Sequence record: MK250027.1
DNA: 64,000 nucleotides
Reading direction: 5' to 3' (one strand)
The position numbers were made by a program, and so were the translations under genes. The notes below the pieces were generated by a model. The model worked only from the letters and a program-made list of their open reading frames with translations, did not search any database and was not told where the DNA came from. Shown here one piece after another: positions 30,616-48,185 of this stretch. The first letter of the stretch is position 1. Each line of letters starts with the position of its first letter.

Positions 30616-30713
30616 GGTTATGTTACATAATGGTTAATGAGGTATCTAATTGATATTTTAATATCAATGGAAGAAAGGTATTGCGGTGACGGGTTCGAGT
30701 CCCTCCATAACCA
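30616..30713 (+). tRNA. tRNA-like gene with a hairpin insertion in the anticodon loop (anticodon not assignable)
   Basis: GGTTATG/CATAACC acceptor stem; CAT-AATGGTTA-ATG D arm; GGG-TTCGAGT-CCC T arm; 30-nt loop containing TTGATATT/AATATCAA. Confidence 0.55.
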
Positions 30714-30934
30714 CTCCTTATAATAATGAAAAGGATGCAATTATCTAACATAGATATTATTATAGTATAAGAAATTATGATAATTCTTAAAATGATAATC
30801 AAGAGATTGAAGTAACTAATTAATGTATAGTTACTAAGGCGAAAGTATAACTGCAATTATATTAGTAGTTGGCGTTTAAAAGATTGAAGAAAATTATTTG
30901 CAGATAATTTTTGGATTGATATTAAATGTAAAAA

Positions 30935-31026
30935 TTATAATAGTGTAGCGGGAATGCACGTTCGATGATAAATCGGAAAGGGATTAACGGTATGACGTTA
31001 TTAAGGGTTCGACTCCCTCTTATAAA
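30935..31026 (+). tRNA. atypical class II tRNA-like element (long variable arm, non-canonical anticodon loop)
   Basis: TTATAA/TTATAA acceptor; GTGT/GCAC D stem; TTCGA-TGATAAA-TCGGA; TAACG/CGTTA variable hairpin; AGGG-TTCGACT-CCCT T arm. Confidence 0.5.
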
Positions 31027-31033
31027 CAAATTT

Positions 31034-42853: not shown

Positions 42854-43291
42854 TCAAAATAGTGCTTCACATTTATTCTCTTTTATCGGGCACCAATTCT
42901 CAAAATCCCATTTGAAAAAATCAGTACATATAATATTATGATTTATAATATCTGTTATTTTATCTGTAATTTCAAAATTATATTTTTTTATTAGTTTTAT
43001 TAATCTTTCTTTTAATTCTTCTGTATTATCATCCATTAATTCTGTTGCATAACATGTATTTATTGCATTTTCTACATCTGAAATATTATTACAATTTTTT
43101 AATCTTTGTTCAACGACATATAAAAATATATTACCTATACCTGCGCAAGGGTCTAAAAAAGTTTTAGAGAAATCTGTAAATACTTCTGGTGTTTCTTCAC
43201 ATAATTTTTCAACTATATGTATTGGCGTAAAATCTTCTTGTGTTATATGATGTCGTTCTTTTCGTTTTTGATTTATATCTTGCTATAACAT
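42854..43291 (-). CDS. N6-adenine methyltransferase SAM-binding subunit (145 aa, TAG at codon 3)
   Basis: EDFTPIHIV and FLDPCAGIGN (motif I); extends track ORF 42854-43036. Confidence 0.8.
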
Positions 43292-43338
43292 TATAAATAT
43301 TATTAATTTCTAATTATTTATATTAGAGAATATTCATA

Positions 43339-43842
43339 TTGTTTATTTGTAAGGGTTATGGTGATATGATGAAGGATCATATTTATAGAGAAGGAATTAC
43401 AAAAACAAATAATAATACTCACTACTGTTTTTTTGCAGATATATGTGCAATAACAGGTCATGGCAATGAAAAAGCAATGTTATCTAATACTGCATATAAA
43501 GTATGTAAATATGGCGAATATTTAAATAGATATACTGAAACACTTTGTCGATTAAGTAATACAGATACTTATAAAGTATATGGTACTAAAGATGAATTAG
43601 AAAATTGGAAATATTTTGTTTTTAATAATAAATTACCATTATTTCTTAATATCGTGTTGACAATAAATCAGCATAATAATTCAAAAGACTATGTACCATG
43701 GTTTACTAATAAAAAATACACAGATAGTGAAATATATAAAATATTAAATATTAATAATATTGAGCAATTATTAATTAACAAAATAATAATTAAGTTTGAA
43801 AGAAATAATACATGGTTTAAAAGATATATAATAGGTATGTGA
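43339..43842 (+). other. silent inverted alternative C-terminus (TRD cassette) of the adjacent methyltransferase
   Basis: Begins at CKGYGDMMKDH, the same sequence as residue 258 of 43858-45204; no N-terminal domains. Confidence 0.8.
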
Positions 43843-44433
43843 TCTATTATATATCTTTTATTTTCCGCATATATATCGTTTAAACCAATTTGAATTTCTT
43901 TCGAATTTTTTAATTATATTATCCATAAATAAGATTTCATCATTATTAATATTTAATATTTTATATATTTCACTATCTGTGTATTGTTTATTTACAATCC
44001 ATGGCATATATTGTTTAACAACATTATTTTGATTAATAATTAAACATATATTAAGAAATAATGGTAATTTATTATTAAAAACAAAATATTTCCAATTTTC
44101 TAATTCATCTTTAGTACCATATAAACAATCAGCTATTTTATTAGTTTGATGTTTACCTTTATCATATTTAAAGGGTTTAATGTTATTTATATTATTCATA
44201 TAATAATGAAAACAAGGTGATGTATATGAAGTAATAAATGAACCATATTTATGATTACAAAAATTTGATTCAGCTTCAAATTTTCCACCAACTTGTGAAG
44301 ATTCAATACCACATAAGCTTCCACCTGTTCCTCCAAGTATTTCTGGATATTTACAGTAATAAGTATTATTATTTGTTTTTGTAATTCCTTCTCTATAAAT
44401 ATGATCCTTCATCATATCACCATAACCCTTACA
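43348..44433. repeat. three nested perfect inverted repeats: 72 bp (43348-43419/44362-44433), 76 bp (43577-43652/44048-44123), 44 bp (43715-43758/43942-43985)
   Basis: Base-by-base manual comparison. Confidence 0.92.
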
Positions 44434-45204
44434 CTTATTTAAAATACTTTGTATAATATCATAATTACCGATAAGATTACAATCATTTATATTATCAACA
44501 ATTTGTTTATCACCACAATTAATAAATTCAATATTATTAAATTCTTGTGAATTATCTATAAAAGTTATTGAACATGGAACATATTGTGAAATATTAAATG
44601 ATTTATTATAATTTTCAATTATAATTTTTTTAACATGGTTTTTAATACGATTTTTTAAGGGAATATACCATTTTTTATTATTTGGTATATCTTTTCTTAA
44701 ATTAATAAGCCATGTAGATGGCTCAATAATTGTCATTTTCCCATTATTATTTAATATATCTAATCCCTTATTAAAAAATTCTAAATGTAAATTTGTATTT
44801 CTATTTGGTCCAACATAAGGTGGATTCTGAATAATATAATCAAATTTAGGCATATTTTTTATATTTAATTTTATATAATTAAATATATTTTCTGCATCAT
44901 ATATATTTGTATATTTTAAATAATATATATTTTTACATATTTTACTATATTCTTTATATGTTTTTAGCACAAATATATTAAACATTTTATTAATTAAATT
45001 ATCAATATAATTATAATCAATATCATTAAATGTTAAAAATACAATTTTACCATTATTATCATATAAATATTTTTTTAATGTAATAGTTTGTTCAATAAAT
45101 TCAACAGAATCTATTGTTCCAAATAAATTATTAATTTTATGTAAAATACATAAACATGTTTTTACATTATTAAAATTTGATAATTCAGAAAATATTTTAA
45201 TCAT
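43858..45204 (-). CDS. Eco57I-like adenine methyltransferase catalytic/TRD subunit (448 aa)
   Basis: FDYIIQNPPY (motif IV), LEFF, GKMTIIEPSTW; no FxGxG motif I seen. Confidence 0.85.
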   Translation of the reverse strand: MIKIFSELSNFNNVKTCLCILHKINNLFGTIDSVEFIEQTITLKKYLYDNNGKIVFLTFNDIDYNYIDNLINKMFNIFVLKTYKEYSKICKNIYYLKYTNIYDAENIFNYIKLNIKNMPKFDYIIQNPPYVGPNRNTNLHLEFFNKGLDILNNNGKMTIIEPSTWLINLRKDIPNNKKWYIPLKNRIKNHVKKIIIENYNKSFNISQYVPCSITFIDNSQEFNNIEFINCGDKQIVDNINDCNLIGNYDIIQSILNKCKGYGDMMKDHIYREGITKTNNNTYYCKYPEILGGTGGSLCGIESSQVGGKFEAESNFCNHKYGSFITSYTSPCFHYYMNNINNIKPFKYDKGKHQTNKIADCLYGTKDELENWKYFVFNNKLPLFLNICLIINQNNVVKQYMPWIVNKQYTDSEIYKILNINNDEILFMDNIIKKFERNSNWFKRYICGK

Positions 45205-45215
45205 AGTTATATTAT

Positions 45216-45950
45216 TTATACTTTATATTTTATAATATTATCTATTGTTTGTTTAAATTCTTCCCAGAAATCATAATCATTTATATAATCATTTATAGTA
45301 TTTCCATCGATAATTATGAGGTTTTCATATAAAGAATTATTTTCAAATGCTCTTTTATATTCATTATAATAAGCGGATGTAAATAATATTAATGTTTTGT
45401 CTTTTGTATTTTCTGGTGTAATAGGTTTAATAAATCCATTTTTTGTACCTTGTGCTAATAATTTATCCATTATATCTGCATGAATATCAAATTTTTTGGA
45501 TGTTCTAAATTTTACTTGTATTACTCCATTTTTATTTTCTCCTAAACCTCTTCTATTTAATAAACATACAGCATCTACTCCATAATCTTTATAACTTTCT
45601 GGTGGTAAACATATATATTTAAATATATATGTTTCTACAGTATCTTTATCTTTTACGTGAATACTTATACTTTTAAAATAATTTAAAAATATAATACAGA
45701 ATAATTCAAAAATATATCCTTTAAATTGTTCTTGCTCATCAATTATATTATTTTTTATTAATATATTATTTGTATATTCTGTAAAATCATCTATTGTATT
45801 AAATGATGTTATATCAGATAAATATTTTATATTTAATATTATATTTAATATTTTTCGAGGTATACTTGTACTTTTATTTCTATACGTACTTTTATCTCTC
45901 CATCTTTTCAAAAAATTATCAAATGCATATAATTCTTTAATATTAATCAT
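45216..45950 (-). CDS. Mrr-like PD-(D/E)XK endonuclease (244 aa)
   Basis: KGYIFELF...DYGVD...IQVKFR. Confidence 0.7.
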   Translation of the reverse strand: MINIKELYAFDNFLKRWRDKSTYRNKSTSIPRKILNIILNIKYLSDITSFNTIDDFTEYTNNILIKNNIIDEQEQFKGYIFELFCIIFLNYFKSISIHVKDKDTVETYIFKYICLPPESYKDYGVDAVCLLNRRGLGENKNGVIQVKFRTSKKFDIHADIMDKLLAQGTKNGFIKPITPENTKDKTLILFTSAYYNEYKRAFENNSLYENLIIIDGNTINDYINDYDFWEEFKQTIDNIIKYKV

Positions 45951-47608
45951 ATATCTATATTATTCTGTTTAAGAACTTCTTTAATTACATTAAGTCTATC
46001 TGTTTCATTAAATAAATTTAATGTATTTATATTTGTTGATAAAGTAGCAAAATTACACATTTTATATATACTATTTAAATTTATATATCCACCATTTATT
46101 TTTAATTCTTTAACAACAGGAATAATTCTATTTTTAAGTTCTTCTTGCAAATTTAGTTTTAATTCATCTATACGTTGTTTAATTTCTATGATTGGCGATT
46201 TTTCCTTATAATCTGTTGTATTATAATTATCATATCGTTTTAATGGATTTTTTGGATGTGAAATATTATCAGATATATTATCATATAAAATATTATCTAT
46301 ACCATAATATTCAACAATTGTACTTGATATATTTTTATTATATTCATCATTACCATTAGATACTATATATACATTAGCGAATTTTTTAATTCTATCATTA
46401 TATGATTTCCCTCTTTCTCCTGAGTTTGTTCTCAAGCAACGACCAATTATTTGTATAATTCTATTTTTTGAATCGCTATCACCATTTGTATTATTGACTA
46501 TAATGCAATCAGATATTGATTTAATATCAATCCCTTGAATAAGTTTTCGACAATGAAATATTATACAATTATCATTATATGAATCTACTTTATTACAAAA
46601 ATCATTAATTTCGTAATCATCATCAGATGTATTTTTAAAACATTTATAATATTTTGAACATTTATTGTATAATTCTGTTGCTTGCTGTCTACTAAAACAT
46701 GTAACTAATAATTTATTATTTTTTGTATTTTTTGATTTAATAGCATCATTCATACAGGCAATTATAATTTTATCAGTAATAATACCATTTGAAGTGATAT
46801 TAAATTTTACATATGGTTTTATTATAATATTATCTTTAATTGCATTATCTGCAGATATATTTACAATACGTTCATCTTCTGGAACGTTTATTTTACCTGA
46901 TAATTTATTTTTATTTATAATATTATTAAATAGTTTTACAAAAATACTTGGTGTTGCAGAAAAACCATATAATTTATAACTATTTTTTACTAATTTATCA
47001 AAATTTATATTATTTGAAAATAAATTTGTAGTATTATCTATTACAGTATGACATTCATCAATATATGTAATTAAATCTACTTTCTTTTTATTAATTTTTA
47101 CATTATCAATAAATTTATATAATGATTTATTACATGATGAAACTAAAGCAATATCATAATCGCTATTTTCAAAATTATCTAATACAGTCTTAGACGATTT
47201 TGAATTATTATATAATTGATAAATTTCTATATTATTATTAATATTATCATTTACAGGTTTTTCATATATTCTTGTTTCATCTGATGAATTTAATATTAAT
47301 AATAATTTATAATTATTTAATACATTATTACATTTTCCTAATACATTTAAAAAATCAGTAAATGTTTGGACATTTAAATTTAATATGTGTGAACATATAC
47401 AAATAATAAGTTTCTTGGATGCCTTTTTATTTTGTATATTGTATATACAATCATCAAATATATATCCAGATTTCCCATATCCAGTAGGCATAACAACTGT
47501 ACCAAAATTCCTACCAGTAGATGCAATAATATCAATTTTTCTTAATCCATTATTAAATGAATCTATATACCATTGCATTTTATTGTCTATATTATTTGTT
47601 GTATTCAT
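45947..47608 (-). CDS. superfamily 2 helicase/translocase, ResIII-like (553 aa)
   Basis: MPTGYGKS, IDECH, SATP, LIQGIDI, QIIGRCLR. Confidence 0.88.
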   Translation of the reverse strand: MNTTNNIDNKMQWYIDSFNNGLRKIDIIASTGRNFGTVVMPTGYGKSGYIFDDCIYNIQNKKASKKLIICICSHILNLNVQTFTDFLNVLGKCNNVLNNYKLLLILNSSDETRIYEKPVNDNINNNIEIYQLYNNSKSSKTVLDNFENSDYDIALVSSCNKSLYKFIDNVKINKKKVDLITYIDECHTVIDNTTNLFSNNINFDKLVKNSYKLYGFSATPSIFVKLFNNIINKNKLSGKINVPEDERIVNISADNAIKDNIIIKPYVKFNITSNGIITDKIIIACMNDAIKSKNTKNNKLLVTCFSRQQATELYNKCSKYYKCFKNTSDDDYEINDFCNKVDSYNDNCIIFHCRKLIQGIDIKSISDCIIVNNTNGDSDSKNRIIQIIGRCLRTNSGERGKSYNDRIKKFANVYIVSNGNDEYNKNISSTIVEYYGIDNILYDNISDNISHPKNPLKRYDNYNTTDYKEKSPIIEIKQRIDELKLNLQEELKNRIIPVVKELKINGGYINLNSIYKMCNFATLSTNINTLNLFNETDRLNVIKEVLKQNNIDI

Positions 47609-47651
47609 AATCCTTTATATTTAATTGTTTATTATTCATTTATTAATAATG

Positions 47652-47660
47652 CAAAGATAC
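47652..47660 (-). promoter_or_regulatory. GTATCTTTG promoter of the R-M-like operon
   Basis: TAnnTTTG match upstream of the helicase. Confidence 0.7.
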
Positions 47661-47680
47661 ATATTATTTTCTAAAATAAA

Positions 47681-47710
47681 AAATGATAGATTAGAAAATC
47701 TATCATTTTA
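47681..47710 (-). terminator. intrinsic terminator
   Basis: AAAATGATAGATT / AATCTATCATTTT. Confidence 0.7.
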
Positions 47711-47717
47711 ATATTAT

Positions 47718-48185
47718 TTAAGAAAGAAATACTTTATAAATATCTTTCGCTAATTTATTTCTATCTTCTTCATTATTAATAAAGTTAGTCATGATATAAT
47801 CTATCAATCCTTCATAACTATGAAAATTAACACTTCTAATTCTCATAATTTCTTTTACTTGCTCTTCATTCAGATATTCATCCATAATCCAATCAAACAA
47901 TGCTGGTATATCATCAGGTTTCATAAAATTAATAATGATATTAAAATAACTCGCATCTAACTCAATAGCTCGGTTACAAAATGAACTGTACTTACCGTAA
48001 TTTCCATTTTTGAAATCTTCTTCACTCAACGGGCCTTCTCCGGTAAGTCTTCTGGAAACTACATATCGCCTAATTGCCTTGTTCATATCCTTTATAGACT
48101 TATTCATTCTCAAACCATCATCATTCTTATCGATGAGTTTCTGAACTCTATCAAAATCTTTTTTCTCTACATTAGTGTAAATCAT
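47718..48185 (-). CDS. hypothetical protein (155 aa), distant relative of the 9252/39832 N-terminal domain
   Basis: KAIRRYVV...FCNRAIELDAS compared with LLNRYVAA...FGHRILDLGGT. Confidence 0.7.
   Translation of the reverse strand: MIYTNVEKKDFDRVQKLIDKNDDGLRMNKSIKDMNKAIRRYVVSRRLTGEGPLSEEDFKNGNYGKYSSFCNRAIELDASYFNIIINFMKPDDIPALFDWIMDEYLNEEQVKEIMRIRSVNFHSYEGLIDYIMTNFINNEEDRNKLAKDIYKVFLS

What the first reader, a model, noticed from the sequence alone, without database searches (positions are those of the whole stretch)
42854..47608. Four-part restriction-modification-like system with a split, separately gated methyltransferase
One host-type promoter precedes an SF2 helicase, an Mrr-like QxK nuclease and an MTase subunit carrying motif IV but apparently no motif I. 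Motif I (FLDPCAGIGN) is in a separate 145-aa gene with its own TATAAATA element (43315-43322) and a TAG at codon 3, while the other three genes have no in-frame TAG. The same activities are fused in Type ISP enzymes (established). Inference: complete methyltransferase forms only once TAG suppression is active, separating restriction and modification in time.
Basis: partly seen in the sequence, partly recalled or inferred. Interest (0 to 1): 0.72.

Follow-up and report, generated by a model that had tools for sequence, protein, structure and literature searches.

The report
Megaphage split methylase with invertible specificity
A giant gut phage (Prevotella phage Lak-B8) carries a helicase, nuclease and DNA-methylase gene set in which the methylase is split into two genes and its DNA-recognition end can be swapped by flipping a 1.1-kb DNA segment; the proposed stop-codon "timer" on the small gene is not supported.

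Summary
The window is bases 1-64000 of Prevotella megaphage Lak-B8, which reads TAG as Gln. The four genes are real: an SF2 helicase, an Mrr-like nuclease, a 448-aa methyltransferase with NPPY but no canonical motif I, and a 145-aa protein carrying motifs X, I, II and III with TAG at codon 3.

A + strand ORF (43339-43842) between the two methylase genes is an inverted, promoterless copy of the large subunit's C-terminal recognition module. It is bracketed by perfect inverted repeats of 72, 76 and 44 nt. In Lak-B7 the 1086-bp segment 43348-44433 lies flipped at 100% identity, giving an in-frame 421-aa enzyme with the other module. The same layout recurs in Lak-A2, B1 and related contigs, and silent cassettes evolve under purifying selection.

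The split is an old family trait. Unsplit homologues have the order IV...TRD...X-I-III, and standard-code Aeromonas phage Ah1 has the same gene pair.

TAG gating is not supported. Codon 3 is GAA in the closest relatives, 42 of 58 window genes lack TAG, Lak-A2/C1 fuse helicase and methylase in TAG-rich ORFs, and TATAAATA occurs at chance frequency.

Best reading: a phage-borne Type III/ISP-like module with an inversion-driven specificity switch.

The parts
47652..47659 (-). Bacteroidetes-type -7 promoter box TAnnTTTG (TATCTTTG), 51 nt upstream of the helicase ATG. It is the likely operon promoter, read by host RNA polymerase.
   Evidence: Sequence. In the window this motif lies 35-61 nt upstream of 7 genes, all TAG-free, and upstream of none of the 16 TAG-bearing genes. 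This is a motif match only.
45947..47608 (-). SF2 helicase/ATPase, 553 aa, no in-frame TAG. Its 3' end overlaps the next gene by 4 nt.
   Evidence: Pfam ResIII 1.5e-07, DEAD and Helicase_C. GYGKSG, DECH and QIIGRCLR motifs are visible. Atlas neighbours are viral ResIII/DEAD helicases.
45216..45950 (-). Mrr-like PD-(D/E)xK nuclease, 244 aa, no TAG.
   Evidence: E82, D126 and Q145-V-K147 are invariant. AF2 model pLDDT 85. Best of 48161 chains is the LlaBIII nuclease domain, Z 8.2, followed by AspBHI, AF1548 and MspJI. A homologue is named an Mrr-domain protein by UniRef.
43858..45204 (-). Large methyltransferase subunit, 448 aa. Residues 1-120 form a variable N-domain. Motif IV (NPPY 127-130) through motif VIII follows. 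Residues from about 250 to 448 form the C-terminal recognition module, which lies inside the invertible segment.
   Evidence: Pfam Eco57I. AF2 pLDDT 91, pTM 0.90. Structural matches: HsdM Z 13.1, and CamA, TaqI and BseCI over residues 1-419. 532 homologues, none of the best 120 with motif I.
43348..44433 (.). Invertible segment of 1086 bp. It holds the 3' end of the large-subunit gene plus the silent cassette.
   Evidence: In Lak-B7 this exact interval is reverse-complemented at 100% identity between collinear flanks. The result is an in-frame 421-aa enzyme and a 194-aa silent ORF.
44362..44433 (.). IR-A, right arm (72 nt, perfect). It encodes CKGYGDMMKDHIYREGITKTNNNT in the expressed gene.
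43348..43419 (.). IR-A, left arm (72 nt, perfect reverse complement of 44362-44433). This is the outer boundary of the inversion seen in Lak-B7.
43577..43652 (.). IR-B, left arm (76 nt, perfect). Its partner is 44048-44123. It encodes YGTKDELENWKYFVFNNKLPLFLNI.
   Evidence: Exchange here would reshuffle only part of the module; that is inferred and was not observed.
44048..44123 (.). IR-B, right arm.
43715..43758 (.). IR-C, left arm (44 nt, perfect). Its partner is 43942-43985.
43942..43985 (.). IR-C, right arm.
43339..43842 (+). Silent alternative recognition-module cassette, a 167-aa open frame with no catalytic domain. It is 55% identical to residues 258-447 of the large subunit, with conserved ends and a divergent, 27-aa shorter middle.
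   Evidence: BLASTP 6e-61. It is the expressed C-terminus in Lak-B7. Equivalent cassettes occur in L013, L015, L028, Lak-A2 (two cassettes) and Lak-B1. dN/dS is 0.10-0.24 for silent cassettes.
42854..43291 (-). Small methyltransferase subunit, 145 aa, with motifs X (FTP), I (FLDPCAGIGN), II and III. TAG is at codon 3 (43283-43285). The last ~52 codons are shared at 95-97% nucleotide identity with the otherwise divergent B4-type allele.
   Evidence: 63 stand-alone homologues. 3391 cluster representatives, 140 of the best 148 at most 260 aa. PHROG 21201 'DNA methyltransferase'. PDB profile hits to motifs X-I of BseCI and HsdM.
43315..43322 (-). It is present, but indistinguishable from background.
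   Evidence: 40 copies in the window against 41.7 +/- 6.1 expected. It lies in the 56-nt spacer between IR-A and the small gene.

Best explanation
This is a variable island of Prevotella megaphage Lak-B8. It encodes a Type III/Type ISP-like, ATP-dependent restriction-modification-like module made of five parts.

1. A promoter of host (Bacteroidetes) type drives an SF2 helicase, an Mrr-like nuclease and the large methyltransferase subunit. That subunit holds catalytic motifs IV-VIII and a C-terminal DNA-recognition module.
2. The SAM-binding half of the methyltransferase (motifs X, I, II, III) is a separate 145-aa protein encoded downstream. The enzyme is therefore a circularly permuted, HsdM/TaqI-lineage N6-adenine methyltransferase (order IV...TRD...X-I-III) cut into two chains after the recognition module.
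3. Because of that cut, the recognition module sits at the 3' end of a gene. A promoterless alternative module lies head-to-head with it in the gap between the two genes.
4. Recombination between perfect inverted repeats (72 nt; inner pairs of 76 and 44 nt) flips the 1.1-kb segment. This replaces the expressed module in frame and so switches the sequence the enzyme recognises.

Shown: the gene content, the repeats, the flipped state in Lak-B7, conservation of the layout, the fused and split homologues, and purifying selection on silent cassettes.

Inferred: that the two subunits assemble, that the variable module sets DNA specificity, that switching is frequent within populations, that it runs on homologous recombination (no invertase was found), and that the helicase-nuclease restricts unmethylated DNA of the host or of competing phages.

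The TAG at codon 3 is most simply a recent lineage-specific substitution in a TAG=Gln genome.
For: - Identity of the window: 100% match to Lak-B8 and Lak-B2.
- Inverted cassette.
- Flip in Lak-B7: 43348-44433 is inverted at 100% identity, flanks are collinear at 99.2-99.7%, and both products stay in frame.
- Same layout (large gene, inverted cassette or cassettes, small gene, bracketing repeats) in Lak-B1/3/6/9, Lak-A2/C1, L013, L015 and L028.
- The silent cassette of L013 is about 91% identical to the expressed C-terminus of P0009/L028, P0012 and P0022.
- dN/dS is 0.24 between two silent cassettes and 0.10 between a silent and an expressed copy.
- Split and permutation: phage 65 p65301 and P0252 are single chains with NPPY at the N-terminus and FTP plus GxG at the C-terminus. 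Phage Ah1 has a 545-aa plus 166-aa gene pair. 34 of 120 large-subunit homologues begin directly at motif IV.
- Functional linkage of helicase and methylase: they are fused in Lak-A2/C1/L015, and the Lak-B4 allele replaces all four genes together.
- Nuclease fold and motifs.
- Recognition-domain placement: the model superposes on CamA, TaqI and BseCI, including their C-terminal DNA-recognition domains.
- No dedicated invertase: the Lak-B7 genome has no tyrosine recombinase, and its only serine recombinase is an IS607-like TnpA next to a TnpB-like gene. Lak core genes include RecA/RadA (10.1101/2021.01.08.425732).
Against: - Only one genome (Lak-B7) shows the flipped state. At least 13 assemblies show the Lak-B8 state.
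- No reads could be examined, so coexistence of both orientations in one population is not shown.
- An assembly or curation choice in Lak-B7 cannot be fully excluded.
- Subunit assembly is untested. The complex prediction gave no verdict.
- The AF2 model of the large subunit places its own N-terminal 120 residues in the position where the small subunit's beta1-beta3 half should sit.
- No methylation or cleavage data exist.
- Lak-B1-type phages keep only the methylase parts, so restriction may not be the selected function.
- The Lak-A2/C1 fused ORF has no detectable Mrr-like domain.
Confidence: 0.65

Rival explanations
1. The small subunit is gated by its TAG codon and its own late promoter element. 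A complete methyltransferase therefore forms only after the phage switches the cell to TAG=Gln, which separates restriction (early) from modification (late).
For: - TAG at codon 3 with no alternative start.
- The three upstream genes are TAG-free and sit behind a host-type -7 box that in this window is found only before TAG-free genes.
- The divergent B4-type small gene also has a single early TAG, at codon 9 or 14, in Lak-B1/3/4/6/9, A2, C1 and L015.
- Recoding as a timing device is a published hypothesis for Lak and other phages (10.1101/2021.08.26.457843).
Against: - Codon 3 is GAA in the 97%-identical ERR2145019 relative. The small genes of L013 and L028 have no TAG at all.
- The split predates recoding and is independent of it: Ah1 uses the standard code.
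- Lak-A2/C1/L015 carry 19-29 TAGs in the helicase-methylase ORF.
- 72% of window genes lack TAG, and one TAG in 145 codons is the background density.
- TATAAATA is at chance frequency.
- No terminator-like site separates the genes.
- Restriction before modification would endanger the phage's own replicating DNA (inference).
Confidence: 0.1
2. The inverted copy is a decaying remnant of a second, convergent methylase gene. The Lak-B7 inversion is a one-off homologous-recombination accident or an assembly choice, not a specificity switch.
For: - No adjacent recombinase.
- Only one flipped genome among about 14 assemblies.
- Contig breaks at the repeats are explained by k-mer length or low coverage.
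Against: - The cassette is an uninterrupted frame across the whole homology in every lineage seen: 139-215 aa, and two cassettes in Lak-A2.
- dN/dS is 0.10-0.24.
- The repeats are perfect for 72, 76 and 44 nt, with no synonymous differences, inside arms that are only 79-88% alike. That points to ongoing exchange.
- The flip is exactly in frame.
- Modules are found silent in one genome and expressed in another.
Confidence: 0.1
3. The 448-aa protein is a self-sufficient methyltransferase. Its N-terminal 120 residues are a cryptic, divergent SAM-binding half. The 145-aa protein is then a regulator, a competitor or a relic rather than an obligatory subunit.
For: - In the AF2 model (pLDDT 91, pTM 0.90), residues 1-247 superpose on complete class I methyltransferase domains: HsdM with 204 residues, Z 13.1, and small O-methyltransferases over 1-220.
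- The Pfam Eco57I match starts at residue 59, upstream of motif IV.
- Relatives carry a glycine-rich GNxxGxFG after the first strand.
Against: - In Lak-B8 that loop reads HKINNLFG and lacks the glycines.
- The N-domain is poorly conserved and is absent from 34 of 120 homologues.
- The small protein keeps all SAM-binding motifs nearly invariant.
- The small gene accompanies large subunits with and without the N-domain.
- It is covalently fused to N-domain-less enzymes.
- A single-chain model may simply dock the N-domain on the vacant sheet edge (inference).
Confidence: 0.15
4. The selected function is protective or epigenetic methylation of phage DNA with switchable specificity (anti-restriction bet-hedging against variable Prevotella R-M systems), not restriction. 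The helicase and nuclease are an optional add-on.
For: - Lak-B1/3/6/9 have lost the helicase and nuclease but keep the large subunit, the inverted cassette with its repeats, and the small subunit.
- Lak-B5 lacks the whole island, so it is accessory.
- The Ah1 and phage 65 homologues have no helicase or nuclease neighbours in the annotation.
Against: - The nuclease catalytic residues are invariant.
- Helicase and methylase are fused in several lineages, and the helicase-methylase association recurs in an unrelated jumbo phage, L014.
Confidence: 0.3

Closest known systems
Type III restriction-modification (EcoP15I-like: Mod + Res)
   Same: An SF2 'ResIII' helicase is followed by a PD-(D/E)xK nuclease, in the same N-to-C order as Res. 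The methyltransferase motif order is IV...TRD...X-I, as in Mod, once the two ORFs are read together. The recognition region is hypervariable, as in phase-variable mod genes.
   Different: Res and Mod are each split into two genes. The gene order is res-like before mod-like. The catalytic motif is NPPY, and the nearest structures are gamma-type (HsdM, TaqI, CamA), not the classical DPPY beta class. Specificity varies by inversion, not by repeat-tract slippage or allelic exchange.
Type ISP enzymes (LlaGI, LlaBIII)
   Same: The four activities are the same. The nuclease model's best structural match is the LlaBIII Mrr-like domain. Helicase and methylase are fused in Lak-A2/C1. The recognition domain is C-terminal.
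   Different: There are four polypeptides here. The order is helicase, nuclease, methylase rather than nuclease, helicase, methylase. The SAM-binding motifs lie in a separate downstream protein. There is an invertible recognition cassette.
Programmed gene-altering inversions in bacterial R-M systems (Type I hsdS shufflons such as SpnD39III and B. fragilis; Type IIG, BREX and DISARM methylase inversions, PMC9881135)
   Same: A promoterless partial cassette in opposite orientation, inverted repeats inside the coding sequence, and an in-frame exchange of the specificity-determining part.
   Different: It is located in a lytic megaphage genome. The target is a split, permuted methylase. No neighbouring invertase is present. 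The repeats are long (44-76 nt) and perfect, which suggests homologous rather than site-specific recombination.
Phage invertible segments (Mu G/Gin, P1 C/Cin)
   Same: A phage-borne inversion swaps the C-terminal module of a protein that sets specificity.
   Different: Those switch tail-fibre host range and carry their own serine invertase. Here the switched protein is a DNA methyltransferase and no invertase is present.
Circularly permuted M.EcoKI-like adenine methylases of jumbo phages (noted in PMC7824862); Aeromonas phage 65 p65301; PHROG 21201 and 11371
   Same: The same family and motif order. The small subunit matches PHROG 21201 (stand-alone) and the C-terminus of PHROG 11371 (fused).
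   Different: Those reports do not, as far as I could find, describe the two-gene split as an obligate pair, the helicase-nuclease partners or the invertible cassette.

Membership tests
Type ISP R-M enzyme | All activities in one polypeptide | tested here: not met
   Four separate ORFs in the window. In Lak-A2/C1 the helicase and large methylase subunit are fused, but the small subunit stays separate.
Type ISP R-M enzyme | Mrr-like PD-(D/E)xK nuclease | tested here: met
   Invariant E82, D126 and QxK145-147. Best structural match is LlaBIII residues 12-170, Z 8.2. Z is modest, but all top hits are nucleases of this fold.
Type ISP R-M enzyme | SF2 helicase-like ATPase | tested here: met
   Pfam ResIII, DEAD and Helicase_C.
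Type ISP R-M enzyme | Gamma-class methyltransferase with motifs X-I-II-III before IV in the same chain | tested here: not met
   Canonical motifs X and I-III are only in the downstream 145-aa protein.
Type III R-M | Res: helicase domains followed by a C-terminal endonuclease in one protein | tested here: not met
   The order is the same, but as two genes overlapping by 4 nt.
Type III R-M | Mod: motif order IV-VIII, TRD, X, I-III | tested here: inconclusive
   The order is met only across two ORFs. Fused homologues show it in one chain. The lineage is HsdM/TaqI-like, not EcoP15I-like.
Type III R-M | ATP-dependent cleavage requiring two inversely oriented unmethylated sites | not testable with these tools
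   Needs biochemistry.
Programmed gene-altering inversion (shufflon / hsdS-type switch) | Inverted repeats within coding sequence flanking a promoterless alternative module in opposite orientation | tested here: met
Programmed gene-altering inversion (shufflon / hsdS-type switch) | Both orientations occur in nature and both are in frame | tested here: met
   Lak-B8/B2 against Lak-B7. This compares genomes only.
Programmed gene-altering inversion (shufflon / hsdS-type switch) | Both orientations coexist within one population | not testable with these tools
   No sequencing run was listed. Contig breaks at the repeats are uninformative.
Programmed gene-altering inversion (shufflon / hsdS-type switch) | Dedicated site-specific recombinase nearby | tested here: not met
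   There is no PF00589 hit in the whole Lak-B7 genome. The single PF00239 hit is an IS607-like TnpA about 78 kb away.
Programmed gene-altering inversion (shufflon / hsdS-type switch) | Silent cassettes maintained by selection | tested here: met
   Open frames in all lineages; dN/dS 0.10-0.24.
Recoding-gated (TAG-dependent) late gene | The product cannot be made without TAG read-through | tested here: met
   TAG at codon 3, no downstream in-frame start before motif I, and a conserved N-terminus.
Recoding-gated (TAG-dependent) late gene | The TAG is conserved among relatives | tested here: not met
   GAA in ERR2145019, L013 and L028. A different early TAG exists in the B4-type allele.
Recoding-gated (TAG-dependent) late gene | Delayed appearance of the protein during infection | not testable with these tools
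   No culture and no RNA or protein data.
Split, circularly permuted N6-adenine methyltransferase (PHROG 21201-type small subunit) | Large chain with IV-VIII and TRD but no motif I; adjacent small chain with X, I-III; unsplit homologues with the same order | tested here: met
Split, circularly permuted N6-adenine methyltransferase (PHROG 21201-type small subunit) | Physical assembly of the two chains into one Rossmann fold | tested here: inconclusive
   The complex prediction gave no verdict. The single-chain model fills the site with the N-domain.

The most novel reading that the evidence does not exclude
A lytic, alternatively coded megaphage carries its own phase-variable restriction-modification-like enzyme. 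The split of a circularly permuted methyltransferase places the recognition domain at a gene end, so that it can be exchanged by recombinase-independent inversion between perfect intragenic repeats. This would give a phage population a mix of methylation and restriction specificities: bet-hedging against the variable R-M systems of Prevotella hosts or against competing phages. The N-domain-bearing large subunit together with a free X-I-III half would also be a living intermediate of the duplication model for methyltransferase circular permutation.
Probability: 0.4. Interest if true: 0.75.

Novelty: new variant of a known kind. Interest (0 to 1): 0.6.

Why it matters
Inversion-driven switching of methyltransferase specificity is well known in bacteria as a defence and epigenetic bet-hedging device. 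Finding the same logic inside a virulent 550-kb phage would show that phages also diversify their own DNA-marking or DNA-cutting specificity within a population. That bears on how megaphages cope with hosts that themselves carry phase-variable R-M systems.

The locus also gives a natural rationale for a split enzyme: the cut makes an internal domain swappable by a single inversion. It points to a large family, thousands of sequence clusters, of stand-alone half-methyltransferases whose partner requirement has not been tested.

For annotation, the 566-nt 'gap' is not regulatory DNA, and the TAG in the small gene should not be read as a timing device without further evidence.

Tried and rejected
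- **Complex prediction.** Large plus small subunit gave no verdict: score 0.00, folded without alignments. It is no evidence either way.
- **Reads.** Two searches for public runs holding the locus listed none. Read laying was therefore not used and within-sample heterogeneity is untested.
- **IR-A core pattern.** No hit in viral contigs. Two metagenome contigs were found: one in the Lak-B8 orientation, and one ending exactly at the inner edge of IR-A at 2x coverage.
- **Contig breaks.** Contigs break at the repeats in Logan, MEGAHIT and SPAdes assemblies. I rejected this as evidence of heterogeneity, because repeats longer than k, or low coverage, explain it.
- **Invertase search.** The only serine recombinase is an IS607-type transposase, and no tyrosine recombinase was found.
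- **N-domain against small subunit.** Profile-profile comparison gave no similarity, probability 0.2%. The idea that the N-domain is a recognisable degenerate duplicate is therefore not supported by sequence.
- **Nuclease profile against fused ORFs.** No hit in the Lak-A2, C1 or L015 ORFs.
- **PDB by sequence.** Only weak motif-level hits for the large and small subunits, and none for the helicase.
- **PADLOC and NCBIfam.** No system-level assignment.
- **Lak-A2 against Lak-C1, and Lak-B1 against B3, B6 and B9.** No further clean inversion events.
- **Sigma-70 and terminator scans.** Uninformative in this AT-rich DNA. The full Bacteroidetes -33/-7 pattern is at chance frequency.
- **Literature.** No paper in the library describes this locus, an inverting methylase cassette in a phage, or methylases in Lak phages.

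Full report
**What the window is.** The 6-kb region matches Prevotella phage Lak-B8 (MK250027.1) at the same coordinates with 100% identity. Lak-B2 is identical. The window has about 25% G+C, dipping to 19-20% over 44-48 kb. Sixteen of its 58 ORFs of at least 100 aa are open only if TAG is read as an amino acid, for example a 1334-aa ORF with 8 TAGs. That agrees with the published use of code 15 for Lak-B8 (PMC7824862; 10.1101/2021.08.26.457843). Reading TAG as Gln is therefore justified by the genome itself.

**Checking the observation.**
- The 553-aa protein hits ResIII, DEAD and Helicase_C.
- The 244-aa protein has no Pfam hit. In an alignment with its few homologues, E82, D126 and Q145-V-K147 are invariant. 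Its AF2 model (pLDDT 85), compared with 48161 PDB representatives, matches best the Mrr-like nuclease domain of the Type ISP enzyme LlaBIII (Z 8.2, 135 residues, rmsd 3.5). AspBHI, AF1548 and MspJI follow. Z is only modest, but the hits are uniformly PD-(D/E)xK nucleases.
- The 448-aa protein has NPPY at 127-130 and an Eco57I hit, and no glycine-rich motif I.
- The 145-aa protein carries FTP (motif X), FLDPCAGIGN (motif I), and motifs II and III, and ends where motif IV would begin.
- TAG is codon 3. No ATG, GTG or TTG follows in frame before motif I, and relatives conserve the N-terminus, so the gene starts upstream of the TAG.
- A Bacteroidetes-type -7 box (TATCTTTG, 47652-47659) precedes the helicase gene.
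- TATAAATA exists at 43315-43322, but the window holds 40 copies against 41.7 +/- 6.1 expected.

The 566 nt between the two methylase genes hold a + strand open frame, 43339-43842. It is 55% identical (E 6e-61) to residues 258-447 of the 448-aa protein, with near-identical ends and a divergent middle that is 27 aa shorter.
- At the DNA level there are three perfect inverted-repeat pairs inside arms that are otherwise only 79-88% alike:
  - IR-A, 72 nt: 43348-43419 and 44362-44433.
  - IR-B, 76 nt: 43577-43652 and 44048-44123.
  - IR-C, 44 nt: 43715-43758 and 43942-43985.
- In Lak-B7 the interval 43348-44433 is present at 100% identity in reverse orientation, between collinear flanks of 99.2-99.7% identity.
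- There the methylase gene is an intact 421-aa frame ending in the module that is silent in Lak-B8. The Lak-B8 module sits in the silent position as a 194-aa frame.

**Conservation of the layout.**
- Lak-B1, B3, B6 and B9 carry a divergent allele with a 450-aa large subunit, an inverted 139-aa cassette, an 88-nt repeat pair of 95% identity, and a 158-aa small subunit. They have lost the helicase and nuclease.
- Lak-A2 has two inverted cassettes of 173 and 215 aa.
- Relatives L013, L015 and L028 have one cassette each.
- The silent cassette of L013 is about 91% identical to the expressed C-terminus of P0009 (L028), P0012 and P0022. The DNA matches in inverted orientation.
- Silent cassettes are uninterrupted frames everywhere. 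dN/dS is 0.24 for silent against silent and 0.10 for silent against expressed. Expressed against expressed gives 0.35.
- Lak-B4 has a third state: all four genes as a divergent allele, with no cassette.
- Lak-B5 lacks the island.
- The variable block runs from about 43010, inside the small gene, to about 47601.

**The split methyltransferase.**
- Aeromonas phage 65 p65301 (386 aa) and the metagenomic protein P0252 (448 aa) are single chains. They begin with FD..NPPY and end with FTP, the GxG motif I, and motifs II and III.
- Aeromonas phage Ah1, a standard-code phage, has a 545-aa protein followed by a 166-aa 'DNA methyltransferase' in the same arrangement.
- The large subunit has 532 homologues. 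None of the best 120 carries motif I, and 34 of them start directly at motif IV.
- A profile of the small subunit finds 3391 cluster representatives. Of the best 148, 140 are stand-alone proteins of at most 260 aa.
- PHROGs holds both the stand-alone family (21201) and the fused family (11371).
- The nearest solved structures of the large subunit are HsdM, CamA, TaqI and BseCI. The nearest sequences to the small subunit's motifs X-I are BseCI and HsdM.
- This is therefore a gamma-lineage enzyme in a permuted, beta-like order. That fits the remark that circularly permuted M.EcoKI-like methylases occur in jumbo phages (PMC7824862).
- The model superposes on CamA, TaqI and BseCI through their C-terminal DNA-recognition domains (model 1-419). 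This supports reading the invertible part as the recognition module.

**An unresolved point.**
- The AF2 model of the 448-aa protein (pLDDT 91, pTM 0.90) folds residues 1-120 as beta-alpha-beta-alpha-beta and places them where beta1-beta3 of a class I methyltransferase sit. Residues 1-247 superpose on complete domains.
- That N-domain is poorly conserved. In relatives it carries GNxxGxFG, but in Lak-B8 the loop reads HKINNLFG.
- It is absent from about 30% of the family and shows no profile similarity to the small subunit.
- The small gene accompanies large subunits with and without it.
- I cannot tell whether it is a placeholder, a docking artefact or a real cryptic cofactor site. The complex prediction gave no verdict.

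**Link between helicase, nuclease and methylase.**
- In Lak-A2, C1 and L015, a ResIII helicase domain and the large methylase subunit are one ORF of 1296-1438 aa.
- In Lak-B4, all four genes are replaced together by a divergent allele.
- An unrelated T4-like jumbo phage contig (L014) has a ResIII protein, a large subunit without N-domain and a small subunit in one row, interrupted by an HNH gene.
- The helicase-then-nuclease order and the IV...TRD...X-I order resemble Type III Res and Mod, each cut in two. The nuclease fold resembles Type ISP.

**The TAG-gating idea.**
- Against:
  - Codon 3 is GAA in a 97%-identical small gene from ERR2145019, and also in L013 and L028, whose small genes have no TAG.
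  - 42 of 58 window genes lack TAG. TAG-bearing genes have about 1 TAG per 100 codons, so one TAG in 145 codons is unremarkable.
  - The fused helicase-methylase ORFs of Lak-A2/C1 hold 19-29 TAGs.
  - The split exists without recoding.
- For:
  - The B4-type allele also has one early TAG, at codon 9 or 14.
  - The host-type -7 box occurs only before TAG-free genes: 7 genes, and none of the 16 TAG-bearing ones. The operon head is therefore plausibly early.
- I rate gating as possible but unsupported.

**Who inverts.**
- The complete Lak-B7 genome has no tyrosine recombinase hit.
- It has one serine recombinase, a 201-aa protein with an N-terminal HTH. It is followed by a TnpB-like gene and flanked by short repeats, which makes it an IS607-like element about 78 kb away.
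- Lak phages encode RecA/RadA.
- Long perfect repeats without synonymous differences fit homologous recombination or gene conversion. This is an inference.

**Limits.**
- No reads could be examined.
- Only Lak-B7 shows the flipped state, against at least 13 assemblies in the Lak-B8 state.
- Frequent switching within a population is therefore inferred from the architecture, the perfect repeats and the selection on silent cassettes. It has not been observed.

**Verdict.** The sequence facts are mostly right. The R-M-like and split-enzyme readings hold. The gating mechanism does not hold. The real point of interest is an inversion-driven recognition-module switch in a phage-borne, split, permuted methyltransferase coupled to a helicase and a nuclease. 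That is a new variant of a known kind.

Noticed in passing
window 2198-47659 (7 sites; e.g. upstream of 5358, 9367, 23173, 27995, 31415, 47608): The Bacteroidetes -7 box TAnnTTTG lies 35-61 nt upstream of 7 genes. All 7 are TAG-free, and none of the 16 TAG-bearing genes has it within 120 nt. This would fit host-polymerase (early) transcription of standard-code genes.
   Followed up: partly
window 30616-30714 and 30934-31027: Two unusually long tRNA calls of 99 and 94 nt: Ile-GAT, and a Tyr with the odd anticodon ATA. They may contain introns or be mis-typed. No CTA suppressor tRNA was called in the window.
   Followed up: no
L006 1327-3331 (Lak-B7 MK250026.1, about 515.5-517.5 kb): An IS607-like element: a 201-aa serine recombinase with an N-terminal HTH (5 TAGs) plus a 449-aa TnpB-like protein (11 TAGs), flanked by a 32-nt inverted repeat. 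It is a mobile element that has adopted the phage's TAG=Gln code.
   Followed up: partly
window about 43010 to about 47601; loci L002, L003, L007-L012: The module is a polymorphic island among Lak-B genomes. B8/B2/B7 carry one allele. B4 carries a 30-39% identical allele of all four genes without a cassette. B1/B3/B6/B9 carry methylase parts only. B5 has nothing. One recombination boundary lies inside the small-subunit gene, whose last ~52 codons are shared at 95-97% nucleotide identity.
   Followed up: yes
L010 107-3997 (Lak-A2), L011 119-4435 (Lak-C1), L015 1962-6251: Helicase and large methylase subunit are one TAG-rich ORF of 1296-1438 aa. About 650 residues lie between the two domains. 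That stretch shows no match to the Mrr-like nuclease profile, so its nature is unknown.
   Followed up: partly
L014 1150-7450 (ERZ28613020 scaffold_12, a T4-like jumbo phage contig): The same helicase, large-subunit and small-subunit row occurs in an unrelated phage. It is interrupted by an HNH/NUMOD4 homing-endonuclease gene and has no inverted cassette.
   Followed up: no
window 47718-48185 (- strand): A 155-aa gene with no family hit precedes the helicase gene. It is present in all helicase-bearing versions (B4, B7, B8, L013, L015, L017, L028) and absent from the methylase-only versions. An AT-rich hairpin plus T-run (about 47673-47705) follows it.
   Followed up: partly
window 44000-48000: G+C drops to 19-20%, against about 25% for the window, across the helicase, nuclease and methylase genes. 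This is consistent with an acquired or fast-turnover island.
   Followed up: no
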